Notes: a model not told the origin generated them from the sequence alone. Counted from the stretch's first letter, positions 1-8,743 are shown. The stretch is DNA of 64,000 nt from Perkinsus chesapeaki ATCC PRA-425 (GCA_013115145.1 JAAPAO010000080.1:1-64000); one strand, 5' to 3'. Program-made: numbers and translations.

Positions 1-520
1 AGAGAGCAGTCCGATTACGATCCAGAGAGGAGTCGAGATTCCCTAACAAGGCCGCAATGTCGTCAGGATACATAAAGCCGACATCAGCGACCGTAGCCAA
101 CCCATCGTCGGATCCCGAAAGCTCCTGGCAAATGGAAGCCCACAAAGAATCATCCACCTTGGCCTTAGCACGAAGAGCAGATATGTCGACCTGGGCAGCC
201 TCGATTCTCTGGGAAAGGTTCGACACGGACATAAAAAAAATGTTGTATTCGCACAAACTTGAGCCAAACTGTTGCAGATATCGGAGCGACTGCATAGTGA
301 TTCAAGTGCAGATACACAATCTAGCTCGCACATCCAATTGTGTGGCAACACAAATAGACAAATGAGGAACCGACTCCGGCTCGAACTGTTACAGTTCAAC
401 TGTACCTCCAAGCACTTCGTGCTTTCCAAGTCAGTACGCCATCATCTAACTTGGGAACTCTACAGCGGAAGCCTTGAACAGGAAACTAATTCCGAGTATC
501 AAATCGTGCATATAATTTAA
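1..520 (+). CDS. possible 3' part of a hypothetical gene
   Basis: Overlapping ORFs 57-365 and 272-520 could be joined by a short intron ending in ttgcag. No recognisable motif. Confidence 0.2.
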
Positions 521-3500
521 CCATTTCGTTGAAGTTATCTTCGACCCCGAAACCGCGAGCGTAGTCGAAGCCCAAATGCGAAAACTCTGCCAAGTTGTTG
601 TCGCTCCTTCCATCTCGCCATGAATGAATCTTTGCGTCCTCTTCCAGCATCGCAATGGCCTTGGCAGTGGCCGCGTCGACCGTCGAGGTTCGTCGCTTCT
701 TTGTCGCCGGTTTTGCTTTGTTCTCGAAAAAATCTGTTAGCGTCTGCTGGTTCTTATCGCCTGTTGTTGAGGCACTCGCTTGTTCCCTAGCGTGAACCCG
801 CACGGCAATTCCTGCACCACGAATCCGATGTACTTCCACGCCTTCCAAGAGGCCGATCGCTAACGTCGCGATATCGTTCTTGGTCGGTGTGATAGGACAG
901 GATCGACTCCACTGATAGCATGCCCCGATTCCCATGAACTTGAAGGGTTCGACCCAGTCATCGGGAGCCAGATAAAGCCTAAGAATGACCCTCTCCGGTG
1001 AGAGTCCTTCCAGCAATGGCGTCACTTGCGCCACAAGAGCCTGGACCAGCTGCCTGGCAGACTCGGGTGTCACATTCCGGATCCCGAAGTTCTTGTCGGC
1101 GCTGACTGTGGAGATATCGGTAACCAAGTCATTCCGATAATCCTCACCGCGAGCATTGGTAAGCATCCTCTCAACGGTTTTAGCCCCGAACGACTGGTTC
1201 AATGCGGGTACCAAGTTAGGGTCCAACAAGTCACCAACCGTAACCAGACCGAACTCGTTCTGTAATTTCTCAAGCGTGCGATAGCCGACCTGTGGCAGCA
1301 TGTGCAGAGGCAACTCAGCCAGGAATGCCCTGTTATGGAGGACCCTCACACCTTTCGGTTTGGCCTGTGTAGTGGCAATCTTAGCAAGAACATGGCTGTC
1401 TGCGATTCCGACTGAACACGGCAGGCCAGTCGCTCGGGTCACGGCTCTTTGCAGTGCCTCAGCTACAGCGGCTTCGTCCGAGTAACTACAGTCCCCAGAC
1501 ACATCGACGATGGCCTCATCAACGCTTTTCGCCACGACTCTGTCAAGCGTCCCTCCACCAACAACAGCCATCAATCGAAGCATCTGTTTCCATGCAGTAT
1601 TGCACTGCGTCAACAACTCGCTGGTGACAGGGATCTTCTCCAGGTCCGGACACAAGTCTTTCACCTCGGCAAGCCACATGCTCCCAGAAACACCATACTT
1701 CCGCGCTGCATAGTTCGCGCTACAGATTTCGCTTCCGCGGCCCATACCAGAAACAACAGCCATCGGTCTTGGTGACTCGGGAACGCCCGTCGCCTGCAGC
1801 TGAGCTACACAAGCGAAGAAACTGTCGAAGTCGCAAAGCATGAACCGCCTGTTTGTTTCTGGTTTCGGCTCTCGATGACGCTCGCACTCCTGCTGAAGCT
1901 CCTCCACAACCTCGGCTGCGACTTCTCCTTCTGACCACAACCCTTCGGCAGGTTGGCATTCTTCGATAAATTGGCGGAATCGCCTCCGCCATGTGCCAAG
2001 GAAATGTAGTCGGCTGCTCGCGAAGAAGGCATCGACCGCACCCTTAGTGTGCCCAACGGATGCCCCCGCAGGCTGACAAGTAGCGAGGACGCTCTTGGAG
2101 GTTACCGGGGGATCTTGGAGCTCGAAAGCCGTGATAGTTATCATGCCGACCCTTCCAAAGGACGACACCATAGGCGCAGCCATCTGTTGTGCGGTAGCAA
2201 TAATATTATCCAATGCTGGCATCGGGCACCGGCGACTCTTTGTCTCATAGGTCGCCGTTGCCTCCCGTCCCAAGGCCACACACAGGCTTTTGGGGTACTG
2301 AGGTGCACGTGCTTTGACACGCTCGATGACATCCTTGCTCAGGGACTCGATCCAAAAGCGTATTTTATCTACTTCTTTCAGGTACGGGCGGAATATTTTC
2401 GATGCACTCACACTGCCGGCTTTAAGGGATTCAGAGTCCTTCACGCCCCTGGCGTTCTCAATAGGGTCCTTCCCTCTCGAGGCTAGCTTCAACCAGGATA
2501 TCAGATCTGCGTGGACCGGGTCTACGTCCAGCTCGTCGATAACCGGCCAGATTTCTGCACATTTTGTGTCACCAGTAAGCCAGGGAATAAGCTTTTCAAT
2601 GTCTTGGAAGGTTGCTCGGCCAACTCCTCTTAAAGATTTCACTTTCACCTCGGACATGAATTCGAGTATCTGACCAGGAGCTGCTGCCCGCCCGCAGAAA
2701 AACGAGAAACCTCACCTTGCTGTCACTCAAAGCCGTGACTGCATCGGGCTTATTCAGGCCGCACGCAAGCTTCGCCAACTGACGGTTGCTAGCTATGCCC
2801 GCGGACATCGTGAAAGACGTGACGGCTTCGACCTCCTTTCGAAGCCGCTCTGCCCAAATAGCGCCTTCCTGCAGGGCCGCATTGCCAACCTAAAATGGAA
2901 TATGAGAGGCTCTGCGAAAATAATGCAAGGCAGTTTCGTTTAAAGTCACAAGGGAGAAATAGCAGACCCAACCTGAAAGAGCGAATCCGTACTCGGTACT
3001 AGAGCCCACTCAACTAAACTCGGTATTAGAAGCATGATCACTCAAATCAGCTAAGTCAAACTGACTCCAGATCATGCGAAAATATGATCCATGGTTCATC
3101 GGAAGCAATCAGTCAGGTTACCGTACTGAAGAGTTAATCGACACCAAGGCTATCATTTTCTATCCATCAATTTCTCTCCGGAGGTGCAACCAGCCTAGCT
3201 GGAGGTTTCCTAATGTTTTCCATACGTAGTCTGCCAACGGAATGCGCTTTCAATCTATGCAAAGCGCATTACAGACTTCGCTCGGATAATGTCAAGTCCT
3301 CATCTGGGAAAATGATATGCACGACAACATAATGTTGCCAACATAGCCTCGGTTCATGAGGCTGTGGAACGTCTCCCTGCGTGAGGTGCCTCGGTTTGAT
3401 TTGTATCACGGTAAGCTGATTCCCGTTCTGCGATAGTTTACTCTCCCCATTTCCGCGTACAGTGTCAGCTCAGTGGGGTCACCGACGCAGCCGTTGAGAA

Positions 3501-4786
3501 CGTGTACCATTTGTTTGCGAAAGACCGACCAGAATTCCGGGCCCACAAGAAGGAAAACCAGGTCTCAGTGGAATGTTGGCTAATCTCCCGTTCTGCAAGG
3601 GCAGCTCACGCGGAGCGACCATTTCTATAAACGAGGTCCACTTATAAGTGGCACTTACACTCATAATGAGTAACCTATCATACAAAGCCTCTTGGCCCGA
3701 GGCCTCAAACTTGGTATACCGGATTCAACACGTCACCGTTTAGTGGTTACCAGAGACGCGTCAAGTTTCCGGCTGTATTGGTTACACTCTGTTGTTCGCC
3801 GGGGCTTAACCAAACCCCTAGCGAAACCGGACTAGGCCCTACTCTTCTACTCGAGAAACCGGTTGGCAGTTTAACCGCCAGCCGGTTTCTCTAGTATCCG
3901 CCGCGCGTTTAACCGCCGCGGTTATCGGCAGGGCTTTCAAGAGCACCACTTCACCTTGTAGTCTACTCGAGGCCACAGGCATAAACTGTCAGATACCTCC
4001 GCTGTGCACCAGGCGTGCTTAACAGACATGTGTTGATGAAAGTGACCCTGTTGGGTTTCTCAGATACGAGATTCGAAATTATGGCGGCAGAAAGGTCCGT
4101 AGGAGTCTTGCAAAGTACCACTTTGAATCGCTATGCCGTCTGTAACCCATTTGGTCTTACCTCACCACCCACCCACTTAATCCCCTCAGGCATTTGCTCC
4201 TGTTGTTCCTCTCCACAGAGAGACGTAAGATCAACGAAAACCTCATCAATGCTGGCACGCTCTAACGGTGCCGACTCCGGAAGTGCAGTACGGAGAGCAC
4301 GCATAACTGATGTGGTAGATTGACAGGATTACTCATGAACCAAGAGGTACCTTCCTCGCTTGCATCTCGATATCGATCCAACGAGACTCTATACCGATCA
4401 CGAGGTTGACCTGGCGGAGGGCCATTAGGTAAAACTTCACCAGTACCAACGTCCACCACTTCAACGTGTGCACTTCTGGCTCCAGCCTTCTCCGCAATGG
4501 AGGTGGAAGCTCCACGCTTGACCTGAGGCCAGCTATGAAGACCATCTATCCGGATCGAGTTCCGAACAGACGTGATACTTCAGCGAACCAGACGTGGACG
4601 TACCCCGGGAATCTTCCTTGCAGAGTAATCCACAGCCAAAACCATGTCCCACTGTGACACGACAAAAGGCACCGAACTCGGGATACCAAGACGGCGGCGT
4701 TCGACTTGAGCGTAGAAGCAGTCGAGGTCGAAGAGCGCTATGACGGGGGGTACTGCATGTGATGACCGAGTTTCAGGAGAAGCCAT
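486..4786 (-). CDS. POLH/REV1: Pol eta-REV1 double Y-family DNA polymerase fusion (~952 aa, 5 exons)
   Basis: Exons 4786-4604, 4522-4351, 4306-4161, 2889-2716 and 2669-486 join through GT-AG introns with matching phases (2859 nt). Pol eta motifs: IALFDLDCFYAQVE, AVDYSARK, RVSLDRYRDAS, ERASIDEVFVDLT, SAGIASNRQLAKLACGLNKP. REV1 motifs: FFASSRLHFLGTW, LCDFDSFF, SEICSANYAAR, SVDEA, VSADKNFGIR, EPFKFMGIGAC. Confidence 0.88.
800..2040 (-). other. REV1: REV1 deoxycytidyl transferase module of the fusion gene
   Basis: N-digit SRLH motif, DFDSFF, SVDEA, and PAD signatures VSADKNFGIR and KFMGIGAC typical of REV1. No BRCT domain visible upstream. Confidence 0.85.
2110..4786 (-). other. POLH: Pol eta-like module (palm, fingers, thumb, little finger) of the fusion gene
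   Basis: Catalytic D in DLDCFY and DE in ASIDE. LAKLACGLNKP matches Pol eta. Thumb (EFMSEVKVKSLRGVG) and little finger (SVSASKIF...WIESLSKDVIER...KSRRC) lie at the start of the last exon. Confidence 0.85.
3848..3921. repeat. two adjacent hairpins sharing a GTTTAACC loop, inside a 1.27-kb intron
   Basis: gagaaaccgg (3853-3862) pairs with ccggtttctc (3882-3891) within a ~20-bp stem. A second ccgcg...cgcgg stem spans 3901-3921. gtttaaccgcc occurs at 3869 and 3907. Confidence 0.6.
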
Positions 4787-5311
4787 ACGCGACGTCTAAT
4801 AATGTGCGAGCGACATGACAAGTTCGCAAATAACGAACACAAACCAAAGCAATGTGATAAAATCTATACTAATGAGAACTCGTCTGGCTCAGAAGCAGTG
4901 CTCCTTCCAGCATGCTGGTTTCGTTGCCGCATCAGACCATCCACTAAATCGGCTGTGTCTTCCCACGTTGCTTCTAACAAGTCAGGGACTGCGCATTGTG
5001 CCTAAAAGCAGCGCTCTCAACCTGGAAAGCCACTCGAGCTCTTCTTTGGTACCTGTGATGGATCTGGGAATGGTCTTAGTGTCGCTAGCAGCTGATCGGA
5101 GGTGCTAAGGCCGGCTGATTGGACAGCATGCAGGTAACTAAATAGCAACCTCTCAAGTAGCAGCTCGGATACATGAGCAACTCACTGGTCAAGTATCGCA
5201 TCACTCAGCGAAGAGGAGCTACTGGCTGAGACGTGATACACCCAAATGAGGCAAAGCCAATCTAGAGCGCTCAGCTGTGACGTGACGCCATCTTTCACGT
5301 TGTGAATAGTA

Positions 5312-6334
5312 TCAACCTAAATGGCGGAAGTCTAGAGGAGGGTAAATGCGAGAATATCTTACCTCTGCCACGTCCGGTGAAGAAGCTTCTGAACCCCAGG
5401 TCTGTGAGTCGATACCCATACCATCTCTAACCAATTGCTCCACGAAGTTGTCCGTAGTTGTAGGCGTTAGAGGTATAAGCCTCGAGATGCCGTCAGGGTA
5501 TCCAAACATTAGGCAAATATTCTCCCATATATCTTGGAGGGACCCCTGATATGCTACGCTCAATAGTAAGCTTCGTCGAGAACTTACCCTGATAGGCGAG
5601 CGGCTATATCCTGTATTGACGGCGGAGATGAATTGGGAGCAGTCCCCGCTCCACACCCCATCCGAAGCCATGATCCCTCGCACCATCGGCCGTGGGTCAC
5701 TAGCCTCCCTATTTGCTATCATGTCGGCGACCACTCTTCCAGGTTCATTATTGAACTCTGTCATCGTGTCTACGGGCTGCCCAACGGGAGCATCGACCTC
5801 CCACCCGGGGGCACCCTCGTCTCCCAGCTCCTCCACGTCCCAACCGTCCTCGATGATGTCGGCGCCGGGACTTGAACCTGCGCCAATATTCTGACTATGA
5901 GCGGGCTGGGCTGTGGAGGATCGCGGCTGCCTAGGAGGAGCTTGTCCTGTCCCATTTCTGGTAGACCCGGAATTGGCACATGCGTTCTTCTGGGTGTTCG
6001 TGGAGGGCATTTCCTCTGCCTCGATGGCCAAGTCGTCGACATCCCATCCACCTCCAGCCGATGGCGGCTGCTCGAACTGCGGTAGGAGAGCGCGAGTTGG
6101 CTCCGCGGGCTTCGGCTCCGGCGCCCGAACCTTCGGCACTATCACCGGCATCTTCGCCTGGCCTTCCGCGGGAGCATCACGTGATGGCGCTAGACTGGGC
6201 ACTGCGCGGGAAGGAGGTTCAGTAAGACTCCGCTCCTCCACCAACTGATCGGCCAGCCGCTCTGCCGCGCTTGTTGCCTTCTGTGCATGACCGATGGCGG
6301 AATATAAGGCACTAAGTGTAACTGATGTTGACAT
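5312..6334 (-). CDS. hypothetical intronless protein (340 aa), Pro/Ala-rich with three GW[DE]V[DE] motifs
   Basis: Long uninterrupted ORF. GWDVDD, GWDVEE and GWEVDA lie in a disordered-looking middle region. Confidence 0.6.
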   Translation of the reverse strand: MSTSVTLSALYSAIGHAQKATSAAERLADQLVEERSLTEPPSRAVPSLAPSRDAPAEGQAKMPVIVPKVRAPEPKPAEPTRALLPQFEQPPSAGGGWDVDDLAIEAEEMPSTNTQKNACANSGSTRNGTGQAPPRQPRSSTAQPAHSQNIGAGSSPGADIIEDGWDVEELGDEGAPGWEVDAPVGQPVDTMTEFNNEPGRVVADMIANREASDPRPMVRGIMASDGVWSGDCSQFISAVNTGYSRSPIRVSSRRSLLLSVAYQGSLQDIWENICLMFGYPDGISRLIPLTPTTTDNFVEQLVRDGMGIDSQTWGSEASSPDVAEVRYSRIYPPLDFRHLG

Positions 6335-6400
6335 TTCGAAAAAGAACTTAGAATTTCGCGACTGTTGACTTGGCTACAAAACTCTGGAGCACAAGGGAAA

Positions 6401-8743
6401 CTATGTATAGGTGACATGAAGTGTTATAAACCCTACAGTGCTCTCATCGCTCATGACCACAGCAGAAGTCTCCGCGCATGTCGTATCAATTGGCTGCAGG
6501 TCGATCAATATCTCTTCGGCTATGCCTCGCCTGGGGTGGAGCACCTGGTGAGAATGCGTACTCGTGAGAGTATGCTCGGCCGGCCCACCGTGTGTCCTGT
6601 GCCGATCACTCCCCAATCTTCCACTTGTAGACTAGCCAGAAGTTCCTCTTCTGTGGAAGAGCCGACCAAGACTTCCACTGGATGGGCATCGGTAGCGGGG
6701 TCCTCGGGTAGATGTATATCCTGAATGGAGCCGGTCGTCTTTGAGGCGAGACGGACGGAGACTGCCGAAGGATCAGGGTCCGAGACTAGGTCGACGTCTT
6801 CAATTGAGAGCAAACGGAACACAGCGGTGATTAGAGGCGTGGAGGAAGCGGCAAGCAAGACCTGACAAACGCATTCCAGACATAGGGATTGAGAGTGATT
6901 GGAGATCCCTATCGATTAGAATGGTGAAGAGAACATCGCAGCGGCTACTTGACACTTCACAACGTAACCCGAAAGTTTCCGACCAGATCGCATCCTGCGC
7001 TTTCACTCAACTCACTGCCTTCCCTGATGGTAGCTTGAGGGAGCTATCGCTCATAGCATGCCTCCAAAGTGGCACTTCCATTCGCCCATCTACTATGGTG
7101 ATCTGGATACCCTCAGACTCTGCTACCACGCTGTCAGGGCTTAGGACCACTACACGAACTTCGTCACCTGAGGGACACTCAGCGGCAAGAAGGGCAGCGA
7201 CAGCGGTAGTGGAGGAGGGCGAGCGAGTTGCTGTACCTGCTTGGCACTCAAGTCCATCCTCCAGTGGAGCCTCCCATCCAGGACAGTCACTCCACACTAC
7301 TTCGGGTGATGTCCAGGACACCCCTGTGGTGATGTTTATCAGCTGGGAACGAAGCTTTAGCTCTGCCGAGGCGAAGACTCGCATTCCTAGCACCCGACCG
7401 TTTTCTGTAGCAACCGGGCCATCCGCCTCACTTGGCAAACCGCTACATTCCGACATGGAGAGCTTCCAACGGCGGCTACTAGTGTTTGTGTGGATAACCG
7501 AGGGAAAGCTATCCTGACGCATTAGACTGGCAGGATGGGTAGGCTCCCCGAAATTGTCGACATCGAACCACGTAAGGTCGTATCTGAGGCTGCTATGGTT
7601 AAGCACGCAGTGATATAGTGAAAGTGAGGATCGCCATATTCCAGACCAGCCAAAACTAAGGCTACTCGTGAACTTTAGGAGAGCACCAAAGTGGTACGTG
7701 CATTCTCCTCGAGCTTTCAGATCCTCGAGGCTACTTTCCACCAGAAACGGCTACAGCGTGGATGATGACATATCCACAGCCTCCCTTCCCCACTTAGTGG
7801 CTATTCCTGTCGAGATGTCCGGTTTAACGAACGTTGCTAGTTCCTCAAATGCTCCTCGAAGATTGTCAAACTCCTTCTCAAACTGCTCCAACCGATCCAT
7901 CGACTGCAGATTGGACTCTAGTAGCCTCAACATGCGCTCTCTCAGTGTTGCTCGCCGACCATCACACTCCGTCACCCCAGACTGCGGCTCATTCAACATA
8001 CGATGTGTTTCGCTACCGCCTGAAACGAGCTAGCTTTGCGTGGAGTTCTGCCTTACCCATCCGCTGCACATCATCATCGCCAGCCGTAGTAGTGCTCGCG
8101 GATTCTATATTCCACTTTCCTATAGCCGCGCCCGGGGGAACTCTAGGTGGCCTCATCGATGGCTCAATGATAGCTCGCGGTATCGGTCCCCGTTCCACTA
8201 GCAACACAACAGGCGAGGAGCCTTTGTCGCCAATTAACAGCACATGCGAATGCAATGGATTCTACCAAGAGGATGGTCATGCTATCACCAACCATGCTAT
8301 TATAAAATGCATCTTCATTCGTCGTCGATCGCCCAAGCTCTATTGGGCAGCCACAAGCCCAAGCTGCAAGTGAGTCCAGCGCAATGGAGAAAGCATTCTC
8401 GACAAAGTGTTGACTTCCGACCGCCTGGAGACGTCCGTCGACAATCGCCGCAAATAGCCGCTCCACACGCAGCACAGTTATAAACCGTCCCAGTGTGAGG
8501 GCGAGGGAGGAAGGCGGTGAGGGTAGCCAGAAGGCCTATAGAGGAATAATATCGATTAGCTCGTAACCGACAGTCACCTCTCTGGCGCCGAGGTAATACA
8601 AAATCTGCCGCGCCACAGTCTGAGCAGCTTCCTGTCAGACAGCCTGGCACCCGAAATCGATAGGGGCTCTGGGAGCTTGCAGCATCTTCACTAACATGGT
8701 CTGGGGACCGGATCACGACATCCTCGATCTTCGCCTCGGGCAA
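6401..8743 (-). CDS. multi-exon protein with N-terminal FYVE-related Zn finger and possible C2-like domains
   Basis: Four CxxC pairs (CSDC, CAAC, CGDC, CREC) in 8315-8743, a coiled-coil segment at 7751-7999 and beta-rich ORFs at 7007-7741 and 6520-6858. Joining these into one gene is inferred. Confidence 0.45.

What the first reader, a model, noticed from the sequence alone, without database searches (positions are those of the whole stretch)
486..4786. Single polypeptide carrying two complete translesion polymerases: Pol eta fused to REV1
Seen: five exons splice with canonical GT-AG junctions and matching phases into ~952 aa. The Pol eta thumb and little finger lie in the same uninterrupted 2.2-kb ORF (486-2669) as the whole REV1 module, so the fusion does not rest on a speculative splice. 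Both modules keep their metal-binding residues (DLDCFY/ASIDE and DFDSFF/SVDE), and REV1 keeps its template-evicting N-digit SRLH. Established: Pol eta and REV1 are separate proteins in animals, fungi and plants, linked by RIR-CTD contacts. Inference: this is a covalent two-active-site lesion-bypass enzyme that could switch polymerases intramolecularly. I know of no such described architecture but could not search for it.
Basis: partly seen in the sequence, partly recalled or inferred. Interest (0 to 1): 0.92.

Follow-up and report, generated by a model that had tools for sequence, protein, structure and literature searches.

The report
Natural Pol eta–REV1 fusion polymerase
This Perkinsus gene really does join two different DNA-damage-bypass polymerases (a Pol eta-type and a REV1-type enzyme, both apparently intact) into one 952-residue protein, and the same fusion is kept in dinoflagellates, so a partnership that animals, fungi and plants run through protein contacts is here hard-wired into one chain.

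Summary
Five minus-strand exons (4786-4604, 4522-4351, 4306-4161, 2889-2716, 2669-486), all with GT-AG borders, give a 952-aa product.

- **Module 1** (aa about 11-408) matches solved Pol eta best. It keeps the catalytic acids and the equivalents of human Q38 and R61.
- **Module 2** (aa about 435-855) follows a 26-aa linker and matches solved REV1 best. It keeps the N-digit SRLH, the G-loop KFMGIG and the catalytic acids.
- **The tail** carries a PIP box (QQTLTDFF) and KKRR. No BRCT, UBM or REV1 C-terminal domain was detected.

The fusion is not an artefact. Contigs from another sample's runs span the junction without a difference. Two further Perkinsus-type species keep the same open frame. 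Distant metagenomic relatives (about 37% identity) encode the whole fusion in one uninterrupted ORF. Transcriptome-derived proteins (one from Polykrikos kofoidii, one unlabelled EukProt sequence) and an Effrenium voratum genome model carry it too. Vitrella Pol eta stands alone, so on this sampling the fusion looks confined to perkinsids and dinoflagellates.

Both modules are under strong purifying selection. Seven literature searches found no description of the architecture, and a dinoflagellate DNA-repair review lists REV1 and PolH as separate genes.

Catalytic activity, single-chain expression in Perkinsus and intramolecular switching remain inferences. I rate it a new variant of a known kind, interest about 0.68.

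The parts
4604..4786 (-). Exon 1 (aa 1-61). It holds the start codon, the start of the Pol eta-type palm with DLDCFY (aa 20-25, nt 4729-4712), and VSQW (Q45, the equivalent of human Pol eta Q38).
   Evidence: Pfam IMS hit at E 4.7e-06.
4351..4522 (-). Exon 2 (aa 62 to about 118). It encodes the Pol eta-type fingers, including GVKRG (R64, the equivalent of human R61) and the RYRDASEEV motif.
   Evidence: The exon matches P0002 colinearly.
4161..4306 (-). Exon 3 (aa about 119-167). It encodes the palm segment with the catalytic pair in ERASIDEVF (D139, E140).
   Evidence: Pfam IMS at E 0.0035 for ORF 4131-4304, which overlaps this exon. Motif position. The motif is conserved in the fused homologues.
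2890..4160 (-). Intron 3 (1271 nt, GTAAGA...TTTTAG). It is unusually long and carries a 24-nt near-palindrome at 3848-3896.
   Evidence: The orthologous intron in L002 is only about 170 nt.
2716..2889 (-). Exon 4 (aa 168-225). It encodes the end of the palm and the start of the thumb, with the Pol eta-type motif LAKLACGLNKPD (aa 205-216).
486..2669 (-). Exon 5 (aa 226-952 plus the stop at 486-488), one uninterrupted ORF. It encodes the rest of the Pol eta thumb, little finger 1, the linker, the whole REV1-type module and the C-terminal tail.
2118..2414 (-). Little finger (PAD) of the Pol eta-type module (aa 311-409).
   Evidence: Pfam IMS_C at E 2.8e-09. The AlphaFold model shows the beta-alpha-beta-beta-alpha-beta fold with pLDDT about 80-93.
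2043..2120 (-). Inter-module linker, 26 aa (LQDPPVTSKSVLATCQPAGASVGHTK). It is poorly conserved but always open in frame.
   Evidence: pN 0.29; low pLDDT.
1935..2042 (-). REV1 N-digit region. SRLH is at aa 444-447 (nt 2015-2004). Its Arg pairs with the incoming dCTP and its Leu evicts the template G in solved REV1.
   Evidence: It aligns to human FYSHSRLHHISMW and yeast YFAHSRLHHLSAW. R-L is invariant across the fused family. pN is 0.036.
1140..1835 (-). REV1-type palm, fingers and thumb. DFDSFF is at aa 505-510 and SVDEAI at aa 607-612 (D609, E610).
   Evidence: Pfam IMS at E 5.5e-28, and thumb motifs below Pfam's own score cut-offs. The best solved-structure hits are REV1 entries 3gqc and 2aq4, E about 1e-24. 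Motif positions.
780..1124 (-). REV1-type little finger, with the G-loop KFMGIG (aa 802-807, nt 941-924) that holds the flipped-out template G in yeast REV1 (KYMGMG).
   Evidence: The alignment to 2aq4 is. The K..G.G pattern is conserved in the fused homologues that cover this region. Position.
726..749 (-). Canonical PIP box QQTLTDFF (aa 866-873), followed by the basic KKRR (aa 882-885, nt 701-690).
   Evidence: The motif is visible in the sequence. P. olseni and the third species have QQTLTDFL and QRTLTDFL. PCNA binding is inferred, not tested.
495..674 (-). C-terminal tail of about 60 aa, specific to Perkinsus. Three helices are predicted at low confidence and there is no family match.
   Evidence: Pfam finds nothing even at E up to 10. 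pLDDT is about 40. Relatives outside Perkinsus carry one or two CxxC...HxxxH fingers at this position instead.

Best explanation
The locus is one real gene of a Perkinsus species. Its product is a 952-aa chain with these parts, in order:
- a complete Pol eta-type Y-family polymerase core (palm, fingers, thumb, little finger; aa about 11-408);
- a 26-aa flexible linker;
- a complete REV1-type core (N-digit, palm, fingers, thumb, little finger with G-loop; aa about 435-855);
- a Pol eta-like recruitment tail (PIP box and a basic cluster).

Shown here: the architecture, the intact catalytic and specificity motifs in both modules, purifying selection on both, and conservation of the fusion in perkinsids, dinoflagellates and unnamed relatives.

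Inferred mechanism: the single C-terminal PIP box (in relatives also UBZ-like fingers) brings both active sites to PCNA at a stalled fork. The Pol eta module can then copy UV dimers and similar lesions, and the REV1 module can insert dCMP opposite abasic sites or bulky G adducts using its own Arg as template. The primer end passes between the two sites of one tethered molecule rather than between two proteins held together by the RIR-CTD contact.

The REV1 part has lost the scaffold domains that dominate REV1 function in yeast and vertebrates. It is therefore probably kept for catalysis, and the covalent link replaces at least the Pol eta-REV1 contact.
For: **Gene model.** The CDS is 2859 nt with GT-AG at all four introns and a single stop, and it is colinear with P. 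olseni P0002 over aa 1-949.

**Two modules in one ORF.** Pfam finds IMS_C at ORF residues 86-184 and then IMS at 279-433.

**Module identity.** Module 2 matches REV1 entries 3gqc and 2aq4 at E about 1e-24, including the N-digit and G-loop. Module 1 was tested on the orthologues P0002 and P0005. It matches human and yeast Pol eta at E 1e-18 to 1e-28, against 1e-11 to 1e-13 for Pol iota. Every named relative of module 1 outside Perkinsus is labelled Pol eta, an Eso1-type acetyltransferase or left uncharacterised.

**Fold.** The model of the intron-free homologue P0005 has two well-folded cores. Its top solved-structure matches are REV1 (TM 0.75 by target) and Pol eta. The model of the window's exon-5 product gives a folded little finger 1 and REV1 core.

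**No chimera.** Contigs of another sample's runs, X4 (1131-2502) and X5 (486-2502), cross the junction; the only difference is a 1-nt deletion at 1184 in X5, far from it.

**Conservation of the fusion.**
- Three Perkinsus-type species keep it.
- L001 and the P0005 contig encode the whole fusion in a single uninterrupted ORF.
- A profile search found more than 12 clusters at the 50% identity level with the fusion. They include two transcriptome-derived EukProt proteins (P0050 from Polykrikos kofoidii and the unlabelled P0048) and the Effrenium voratum model CAJ1332901.1.
- Both DxD and S.DE sites, the R-L of the N-digit and the G-loop are conserved across the family, with one partial model as an exception.

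**Phylogeny.** All fused REV1 modules of perkinsids, dinoflagellates and the metagenome clade fall in one clade (SH-aLRT 99) inside REV1-type sequences. All module 1 sequences fall inside the Pol eta-type clade that contains Vitrella's stand-alone Pol eta. Monophyly of module 1 is not rejected (p-AU 0.27).

**Selection.** Between the window and L002, pN is 0.12 for little finger 1, 0.036 for the N-digit and 0.06-0.08 for the REV1 core, while pS is about 0.77 (saturated).
Against: No RNA run holding this locus was listed for this species, so the splice junctions and the single mRNA in Perkinsus rest on homology and on transcripts of other genera.

There are no biochemical data for either site.

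The relative position of the two modules is not predicted with confidence (pTM 0.46-0.50), so nothing structural supports a direct hand-off.

The Perkinsus N-digit segment and tail are modelled poorly.

The Perkinsus proteins lack the UBZ-like fingers seen in relatives.

One dinoflagellate model (P0051) has GLDE instead of SIDE in module 1 and lacks its N-terminus. That may be a gene-model defect or real decay in that lineage.

Symbiodinium seems also to have a stand-alone PolH, so the fusion need not be the only Pol eta in every lineage.
Confidence: 0.8

Rival explanations
1. There is one gene but two proteins. The continuous ORF is separated in vivo into a free Pol eta and a free REV1 core. 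This could happen through an internal spliced-leader trans-splice site or promoter, through internal initiation, or through proteolysis in the linker. The fusion would then be a co-expression device rather than a two-headed enzyme.
For: Perkinsids and dinoflagellates trans-splice their mRNAs (general knowledge). The linker is the least conserved and least ordered part of the protein. Dinoflagellate linkers reach about 300 aa. No Perkinsus RNA or protein data were available.
Against: No homologue has a stop codon or frame change between the modules, including the intron-free ORFs and the transcriptome-derived proteins. In this window no Met lies between little finger 1 and the N-digit (sequence), and in several homologues the linker is only about 10-25 aa. 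The only PIP/NLS/UBZ tail follows module 2, so a released Pol eta module would lack any recognisable recruitment motif in Perkinsus.
Confidence: 0.1
2. The fusion is real but only one module works as a polymerase. The other would be kept as a DNA- or partner-binding scaffold, in the way that REV1's catalytic activity is largely dispensable for bypass in yeast and vertebrates.
For: It is established that REV1's main role elsewhere is non-catalytic. P0051 has a variant GLDE in module 1. Perkinsus module 2 reads DFDSFF/SVDE where relatives read DMDCFF/SCDE.
Against: Across lineages about 35% identical overall, both modules keep their carboxylates. They also keep residues that matter only for catalysis or specificity: the equivalents of Q38 and R61 in module 1, and the N-digit R-L and G-loop in module 2. 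Non-synonymous change is low in both. The REV1 part has lost exactly the domains that carry its scaffold role, which leaves catalysis as the obvious reason for keeping it.
Confidence: 0.08
3. The fusion is an artefact: an assembly chimera or a read-through of two neighbouring genes that merely look fused.
For: The public P. olseni model has obvious local errors.
Against: Contigs of another sample's runs cross the junction cleanly. The same frame is found in three Perkinsus-type species, in several unrelated metagenome assemblies and in Trinity transcripts. The linker is 26 aa with no stop.
Confidence: 0.02

Closest known systems
REV1 (deoxycytidyl transferase) of yeast and human, solved cores 2aq4 and 3gqc
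   Same: Module 2 has the Y-family core and the REV1-only features. These are the N-digit with the Arg-Leu pair (SRLH), the G-loop in the little finger (KFMGIG against yeast KYMGMG) and the catalytic Asp/Asp/Glu. The predicted fold of the homologue P0005 matches 3gqc with TM 0.75 by target.
   Different: No BRCT domain, UBM or C-terminal four-helix domain (REV1_C) was detected. The place of REV1's N-terminal region is taken by a whole Pol eta core, and the tail carries a PIP box.
DNA polymerase eta (RAD30/POLH/XPV)
   Same: Module 1 matches solved Pol eta best. It keeps DxDCF(Y), SIDE, the YR.AS.EV and LAKLACG.NKP motifs and the equivalents of human Q38 and R61. The C-terminal PIP box plus basic cluster, and the UBZ-like fingers in relatives, resemble Pol eta's own tail.
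   Different: In the chain, the tail is separated from the Pol eta core by an entire REV1 core. Perkinsus has no zinc finger. The internal motif after the little finger (GPQITSFF in dinoflagellates) is absent in Perkinsus.
Pol eta-REV1 'polymerase bridge' on PCNA, via the RIR-CTD contact (yeast and mammals; for example PMC5041468 and PMC8560953, listed)
   Same: The same two enzymes are brought together at the same clamp, which is presumably the function the fusion hard-wires.
   Different: In yeast and mammals the link is a reversible, non-covalent contact that also serves Pol iota, Pol kappa and Rev7. Here the link is covalent with 1:1 stoichiometry, and the CTD that would bind the other partners is not detectable.
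Schizosaccharomyces pombe Eso1 (Pol eta fused to the Eco1/Ctf7 cohesion acetyltransferase; named in PMC4493104)
   Same: It is a natural fusion with a Pol eta core at the N-terminus of a longer protein. Relatives labelled 'N-acetyltransferase eso1' appear among the module 1 hits.
   Different: The partner in Eso1 is an acetyltransferase, not a second polymerase, so Eso1 has one polymerase active site.

Membership tests
REV1 (catalytic core) | Y-family palm, fingers, thumb and little finger whose best match is to REV1 | tested here: met
   phmmer against PDB gives REV1 entries 3gqc and 2aq4 at E 7e-25 and 3.5e-24, ahead of DinB/Dpo4 at 1e-17 to 1e-18. The module falls inside the REV1-type clade of the tree.
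REV1 (catalytic core) | N-digit with the Arg that templates dCTP and the Leu that evicts the template G | tested here: met
   AFFASSRLHFLGTW aligns with yeast YFAHSRLHHLSAW and human FYSHSRLHHISMW. R-L is invariant in all fused homologues.
REV1 (catalytic core) | G-loop in the little finger that holds the flipped-out G | tested here: met
   EPFKFMGIGACYQWSRS aligns with yeast EPPKYMGMGRCDSFSRS. The K..G.G pattern is conserved.
REV1 (catalytic core) | Catalytic Asp, Asp and Glu | tested here: met
   D505 and D507 in DFDSFF, and D609 and E610 in SVDEAI. These columns are invariant in alignments A2 and A3.
REV1 (full-length protein) | N-terminal BRCT domain | tested here: not met
   There is no BRCT hit in the exon-5 product or in the fused homologues. 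The N-terminus is a Pol eta core and the protein starts 19 aa before DLDCFY. Canonical REV1 sequences in the same searches do carry PF00533 or PF16589 (P0006).
REV1 (full-length protein) | UBM motifs and the C-terminal domain (PF16727) that binds RIR peptides and Rev7 | tested here: not met
   Pfam finds nothing in the last 103 aa even at E up to 10, and finds no REV1_C or UBM in any fused homologue. A canonical REV1 (P0007) scored REV1_C at 2e-16 in the same kind of scan. A very divergent CTD cannot be excluded, because the tail model has low confidence.
REV1 | dCMP transferase activity | not testable with these tools
   This needs a primer-extension assay.
DNA polymerase eta | Y-family core whose best match is to Pol eta | tested here: met
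   Tested on the orthologues. P0002:1-425 matches human Pol eta at 2e-20 and yeast Pol eta at 1e-18, against Pol iota at 6e-13. P0005:1-400 matches human Pol eta at 5e-28. The window's own exons are colinear with P0002 at 79% identity over the whole protein and 85% in module 1. Module 1 falls inside the Pol eta-type clade with Vitrella Pol eta.
DNA polymerase eta | Equivalents of human Q38 and R61, which contact the templating dimer and the incoming nucleotide | tested here: met
   VVSQW aligns with human AVVQY, and GVKR with GVTR. The Q is kept in all fused homologues but one (P0045 has S) and the R in all. The role of these residues is taken from established Pol eta structures, not tested here.
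DNA polymerase eta | Catalytic Asp/Glu triad | tested here: met
   D20 in DLDCFY, and D139 and E140 in SIDEVF. They are conserved in fused homologues, except for GLDE in the partial model P0051.
DNA polymerase eta | C-terminal PIP box and UBZ zinc finger | tested here: inconclusive
   A PIP box QQTLTDFF is present, but it lies after the REV1 module. Perkinsus has no zinc finger. Relatives have one or two CxxC...HxxxH fingers, modelled as beta-beta-alpha. No Pfam zf_UBZ hit was found, only a weak zf-WRNIP1_ubi hit in P0051. Binding was not tested.
DNA polymerase eta | Error-free bypass of cyclobutane pyrimidine dimers | not testable with these tools
   This needs biochemistry or genetics.

The most novel reading that the evidence does not exclude
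Before perkinsids and dinoflagellates split, the TLS polymerase-switch network was rebuilt. The REV1 catalytic core was cut loose from its scaffold domains and welded between the Pol eta core and Pol eta's PCNA/ubiquitin-binding tail. The result is an obligate two-active-site bypass enzyme that works as one chain with both sites active. REV1's scaffold part may survive as a separate gene without a polymerase domain; an unchecked lead from this scan (s1-226196) points that way. If so, this would be a natural experiment that separates REV1's catalytic role from its scaffold role.
Probability: 0.45. Interest if true: 0.8.

Novelty: new variant of a known kind. Interest (0 to 1): 0.68.

Why it matters
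How a stalled replisome chooses and exchanges translesion polymerases is still argued over ("tool belt" against "polymerase bridge"), and so is why REV1 keeps a catalytic site that seems almost dispensable.

This fusion bears on both questions. Selection has tied Pol eta and REV1 together covalently, at 1:1 stoichiometry, with a single recruitment tail. It has kept this since before perkinsids and dinoflagellates diverged, while discarding REV1's scaffold domains and keeping every catalytic hallmark. That is Rosetta-stone evidence that the two enzymes act at the same site. It also argues that REV1's dCMP transferase activity is under selection in its own right.

The fusion offers a compact natural construct for structural and single-molecule work on polymerase hand-off.

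It also matters for annotation. Public records call these proteins simply "deoxycytidyl transferase" or "unnamed protein", and a dinoflagellate review counts the two halves as separate genes.

Tried and rejected
- **RNA evidence in this species.** Both run searches listed no RNA run that holds the locus. The two RNA runs with the species label held none of the sampled words, and the one that was laid (X1) held nothing on the stretch. Splice junctions therefore could not be confirmed by reads.
- **Assembly chimera.** Rejected.
- **Rfam scan of 1-7000.** Nothing reached threshold.
- **Protein Atlas look-up of the exon-5 product.** It returned only generic Y-family clusters and nothing about the fusion.
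- **C-terminal 103 aa of the Perkinsus protein.** No Pfam match and a low-confidence model, so its nature (ubiquitin-binding, CTD-like or other) stays open.
- **Stand-alone Pol eta or REV1 in Perkinsus.** None appeared among the hits. Those searches score only the 8000 candidates sharing most words, so this is weak evidence of absence.
- **Taxon of the about 37%-identical metagenome clade (P0004, P0005, P0043-47) and of P0056/P0059.** It could not be named. The contigs carry eukaryotic neighbours such as DBR1 and MoaE, but no labelled relatives turned up.
- **One origin for all fusions.** The AU test that holds P0056/P0059 module 1 together with the other fused module 1 sequences was marginally rejected (p 0.033). 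The matching test for module 2 did not finish. I therefore do not claim a single origin for all fusions.
- **Literature.** Six full-text searches and three papers read found no description of a Pol eta-REV1 fusion. The library lacks most subscription journals, so this is not proof of absence.

Full report
**1. What is in the sequence**

The minus strand between 4786 and 486 carries five exons: 4786-4604, 4522-4351, 4306-4161, 2889-2716 and 2669-486. The four introns are 81, 44, 1271 and 46 nt long and all begin GT and end AG. The joined CDS is 2859 nt and translates to 952 aa with a single terminal stop.

The last exon is one uninterrupted ORF of 727 codons. In that ORF Pfam places a Y-family little finger (IMS_C, E 2.8e-09) at residues 86-184. 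A second Y-family palm/fingers domain (IMS, E 5.5e-28) follows at 279-433, and thumb motifs at 448-510. ORFs overlapping exons 1 and 3 hit the N-terminal and central parts of IMS.

So a little finger, which ends a Y-family polymerase, is followed in the same open frame by the start of another polymerase. The only correction is that the first thumb helix of module 1 lies in exon 4.

**2. Identity of the two modules**

Module 2 (model aa about 435-855) finds solved REV1 first: human 3gqc at E 7e-25 and yeast 2aq4 at 3.5e-24. DinB-type enzymes follow at 1e-17 to 1e-18. The alignments include the two features that define REV1's protein-templated mechanism:
- the N-digit: AFFASSRLHFLGTW against yeast YFAHSRLHHLSAW and human FYSHSRLHHISMW;
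- the G-loop of the little finger: EPFKFMGIGACYQWSRS against yeast EPPKYMGMGRCDSFSRS.

The catalytic acids are D505/D507 and D609/E610.

Module 1 could be searched as one piece only through its orthologues. P0002:1-425 gives human Pol eta at 2e-20 and yeast Pol eta at 1e-18, with Pol iota at 6e-13 and Pol kappa at 8e-10. P0005:1-400 gives human Pol eta at 5e-28. The alignments pair VVSQW with human AVVQY (Q38) and GVKR with GVTR (R61). They also show the Pol eta-typical RYRDASEEV, ERASIDE and LAKLACGLNKP motifs. A word-based search with module 1 returned, outside Perkinsus, proteins labelled DNA polymerase eta or Eso1-type acetyltransferase, some uncharacterised proteins, and no other polymerase subfamily.

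After module 2 come a canonical PIP box (QQTLTDFF, aa 866-873), KKRR (882-885) and a tail of about 60 aa with no family match. No BRCT, UBM or REV1 C-terminal domain is detectable, although canonical REV1 proteins in the same scans show them.

**3. Is the fusion real?**

- **Assembly.** Contigs of another sample's runs cover 1131-2502 (X4) and 486-2502 (X5). The only difference is a 1-nt deletion at 1184 in X5, and both cross the junction at 2040-2120 cleanly.
- **Close relatives.** The window comes from a Perkinsus species. P. olseni has an annotated 918-aa orthologue, labelled 'deoxycytidyl transferase', that aligns with aa 1-949 at 79% identity. A third species (Logan contig L002, about 80% identical to both) has the same exon structure and the same open frame.
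- **Distant relatives.** P0005 (937 aa) and the L001 ORF 2108-4957 are about 37% identical over both modules. Each is encoded in one uninterrupted ORF, so no splice is needed for the fusion at all.
- **Wider survey.** A profile of four fused proteins searched against 1.84 billion representatives found more than a dozen 50%-identity clusters with two non-overlapping polymerase cores. Three of them are labelled or transcript-derived: P0050 from a Polykrikos kofoidii Trinity transcript, P0048 from another EukProt Trinity transcript, and P0051, which is Effrenium voratum CAJ1332901.1. The Trinity proteins are transcript-level evidence for one mRNA in dinoflagellates.
- **Outgroup.** The chromerid Vitrella brassicaformis has a stand-alone 601-aa Pol eta that matches only the module 1 part of the profile.

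**4. Conservation and selection**

Across the fused family the following are conserved:
- both DxDxF(F/Y) and S.DE sites;
- the module 1 Gln/Arg pair, except that one homologue (P0045) has Ser for the Gln;
- the N-digit core, SRLHF(L/M)GTW, with R-L invariant;
- the K..G.G loop.

The exception for the catalytic sites is the N-terminally incomplete Effrenium model, which reads GLDE in module 1.

Between the window and L002, synonymous sites are saturated (pS about 0.77), while pN differs by region:

| Region | pN |
|---|---|
| Little finger 1 | 0.12 |
| N-digit | 0.036 |
| REV1 palm to thumb | 0.08 |
| REV1 little finger | 0.06 |
| Linker | 0.29 |
| Tail | 0.23 |

Neither module looks like a decaying remnant.

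In a joint tree, all fused REV1 modules of the Perkinsus, metagenome and dinoflagellate groups form one clade (SH-aLRT 99) within REV1-type sequences. All module 1 sequences lie within the Pol eta-type clade (99). Holding them as one clade is not rejected (p-AU 0.27). This fits a single fusion before the perkinsid-dinoflagellate split, though the tree was a quick one and its backbone is weak.

A further pair, P0056 and P0059, also joins a Pol eta-type core to a REV1-type core (N-digit SRLSF). It branches apart, and the joint clade is marginally rejected (p 0.033). It may be an older or a separate fusion.

**5. Structure**

AlphaFold on P0005 with 15 aligned fused sequences gave mean pLDDT 78. 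The model has two well-formed cores (1-392 and 477-831), a helical N-digit (405-439), a disordered stretch (835-877) and two small beta-beta-alpha units at the CxxC...HxxxH motifs. The pTM of 0.46 shows that the relative position of the modules is undetermined. Foldseek against the PDB put human REV1 (TM 0.75 by target) and human Pol eta at the top.

The window's own exon-5 product (17 sequences in the alignment) gave a folded little finger 1 and REV1 core, but a poorly defined linker, N-digit start and tail.

**6. How it most likely works**

*Shown:* one chain, two complete and conserved catalytic cores of different specificity classes, and one recruitment tail at the far C-terminus.

*Inferred from established knowledge of Pol eta, REV1 and PCNA:*
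- The PIP box (plus UBZ-like fingers outside Perkinsus) docks the protein on (ubiquitylated) PCNA.
- The Pol eta module handles UV dimers and similar lesions.
- The REV1 module inserts C opposite abasic sites and damaged G.
- The flexible linker (26 aa here, up to about 300 aa in dinoflagellates) lets either core engage the primer end.
- The covalent link thereby stands in for the RIR-CTD contact used elsewhere.

REV1's scaffold domains are missing while its catalytic hallmarks are intact, so the REV1 part is probably retained for catalysis.

Dinoflagellate versions keep a GPQITSFF-type motif just after little finger 1. From memory this resembles the internal PIP-like motif of human Pol eta; I did not test that. 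If it holds, the REV1 core may have been inserted into Pol eta's tail rather than simply appended.

**7. Rivals**

- Separate proteins made from one gene, by internal trans-splicing, internal initiation or cleavage. This cannot be excluded without Perkinsus RNA or protein data. It is disfavoured because the frame is always open, the linkers are short, and the only recruitment motifs follow module 2.
- One inactive module. This is disfavoured by the conservation pattern.
- An artefact. This is effectively excluded.

**8. Known or new?**

The proteins are in public databases under uninformative names. Six full-text searches and three papers read gave no description of a Pol eta-REV1 fusion.

A 2019 review of dinoflagellate DNA-damage responses lists REV1 and PolH orthologues as separate entries. 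In its Table 8 the S. minutum models 017537 (a PolH hit) and 017539/017542 (REV1 hits) have near-consecutive identifiers, as expected if one fused locus was split by the gene caller. The same table lists another, stronger PolH hit (015189), so a stand-alone Pol eta may coexist with the fusion there (PMC6680887).

The nearest described precedent for a fused Pol eta is S. pombe Eso1 (Pol eta plus acetyltransferase), which has a single polymerase site.

I class the finding as a new variant of a known kind: two well-known enzymes in an apparently undescribed, anciently conserved covalent arrangement.

I could not check it. If true, it would complete a fission-plus-fusion story.

Noticed in passing
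window 2890-4160 (intron 3), palindrome at 3848-3896: Intron 3 is 1271 nt, while the matching intron in the related species is only about 170 nt (L002, about 5595-5764). It contains a 24-nt near-perfect palindrome that occurs nowhere else in the window. It may be an inserted element.
   Followed up: partly
proteins P0056 and P0059 (ENA/JGI metagenome contigs of 7-9.6 kb): This is a second group of Pol eta-type plus REV1-type fusions. It has an SRLSF N-digit, a long acidic linker and a different Cys/His-rich C-terminus. It branches apart from the Perkinsus and dinoflagellate fusions, and the AU test marginally rejects one clade (p 0.033). It may be an independent or an older fusion.
   Followed up: partly
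proteins P0057, P0163 and P0052: These are other tandem Y-family proteins. P0057 and P0163 pair a Pol eta-type core with a very divergent second Y-family core, and P0057 also has a RanBP2-type zinc finger. P0052 (1958 aa) has two nearly identical REV1-type cores, which may be a tandem duplication or a gene-model artefact.
   Followed up: no
P0002 (public P. olseni model) compared with window aa 528-548 and aa 667-684: The public P. olseni protein lacks two conserved REV1 segments that the window and L002 both encode (…AVVSGMGRGSEICSANYAAR… and …LHNRAFLAELPLHMLPQ…). These are probably false introns in the public annotation.
   Followed up: partly
PMC6680887, Table 8 (Symbiodinium minutum gene models): Models symbB.v1.2.017537 (listed under PolH) and 017539/017542 (listed under REV1) have near-consecutive identifiers, as if one fused locus had been split. 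A separate, stronger PolH hit (015189) suggests a stand-alone Pol eta as well.
   Followed up: no
alignment A2, linker region of the dinoflagellate proteins P0048, P0049, P0050, P0051 and P0197: Immediately after little finger 1 these proteins keep a GPQI(T/S)xFF motif, followed by a linker of up to about 300 aa. Perkinsus and the metagenome clade have lost both.
   Followed up: no
window 5312-6334 (minus strand): There is a 340-aa, Pro/Ala/Ser-rich ORF just upstream of the polymerase gene on the same strand. The orthologues start where this gene model starts, so the ORF is not part of the gene. It was not analysed further.
   Followed up: no
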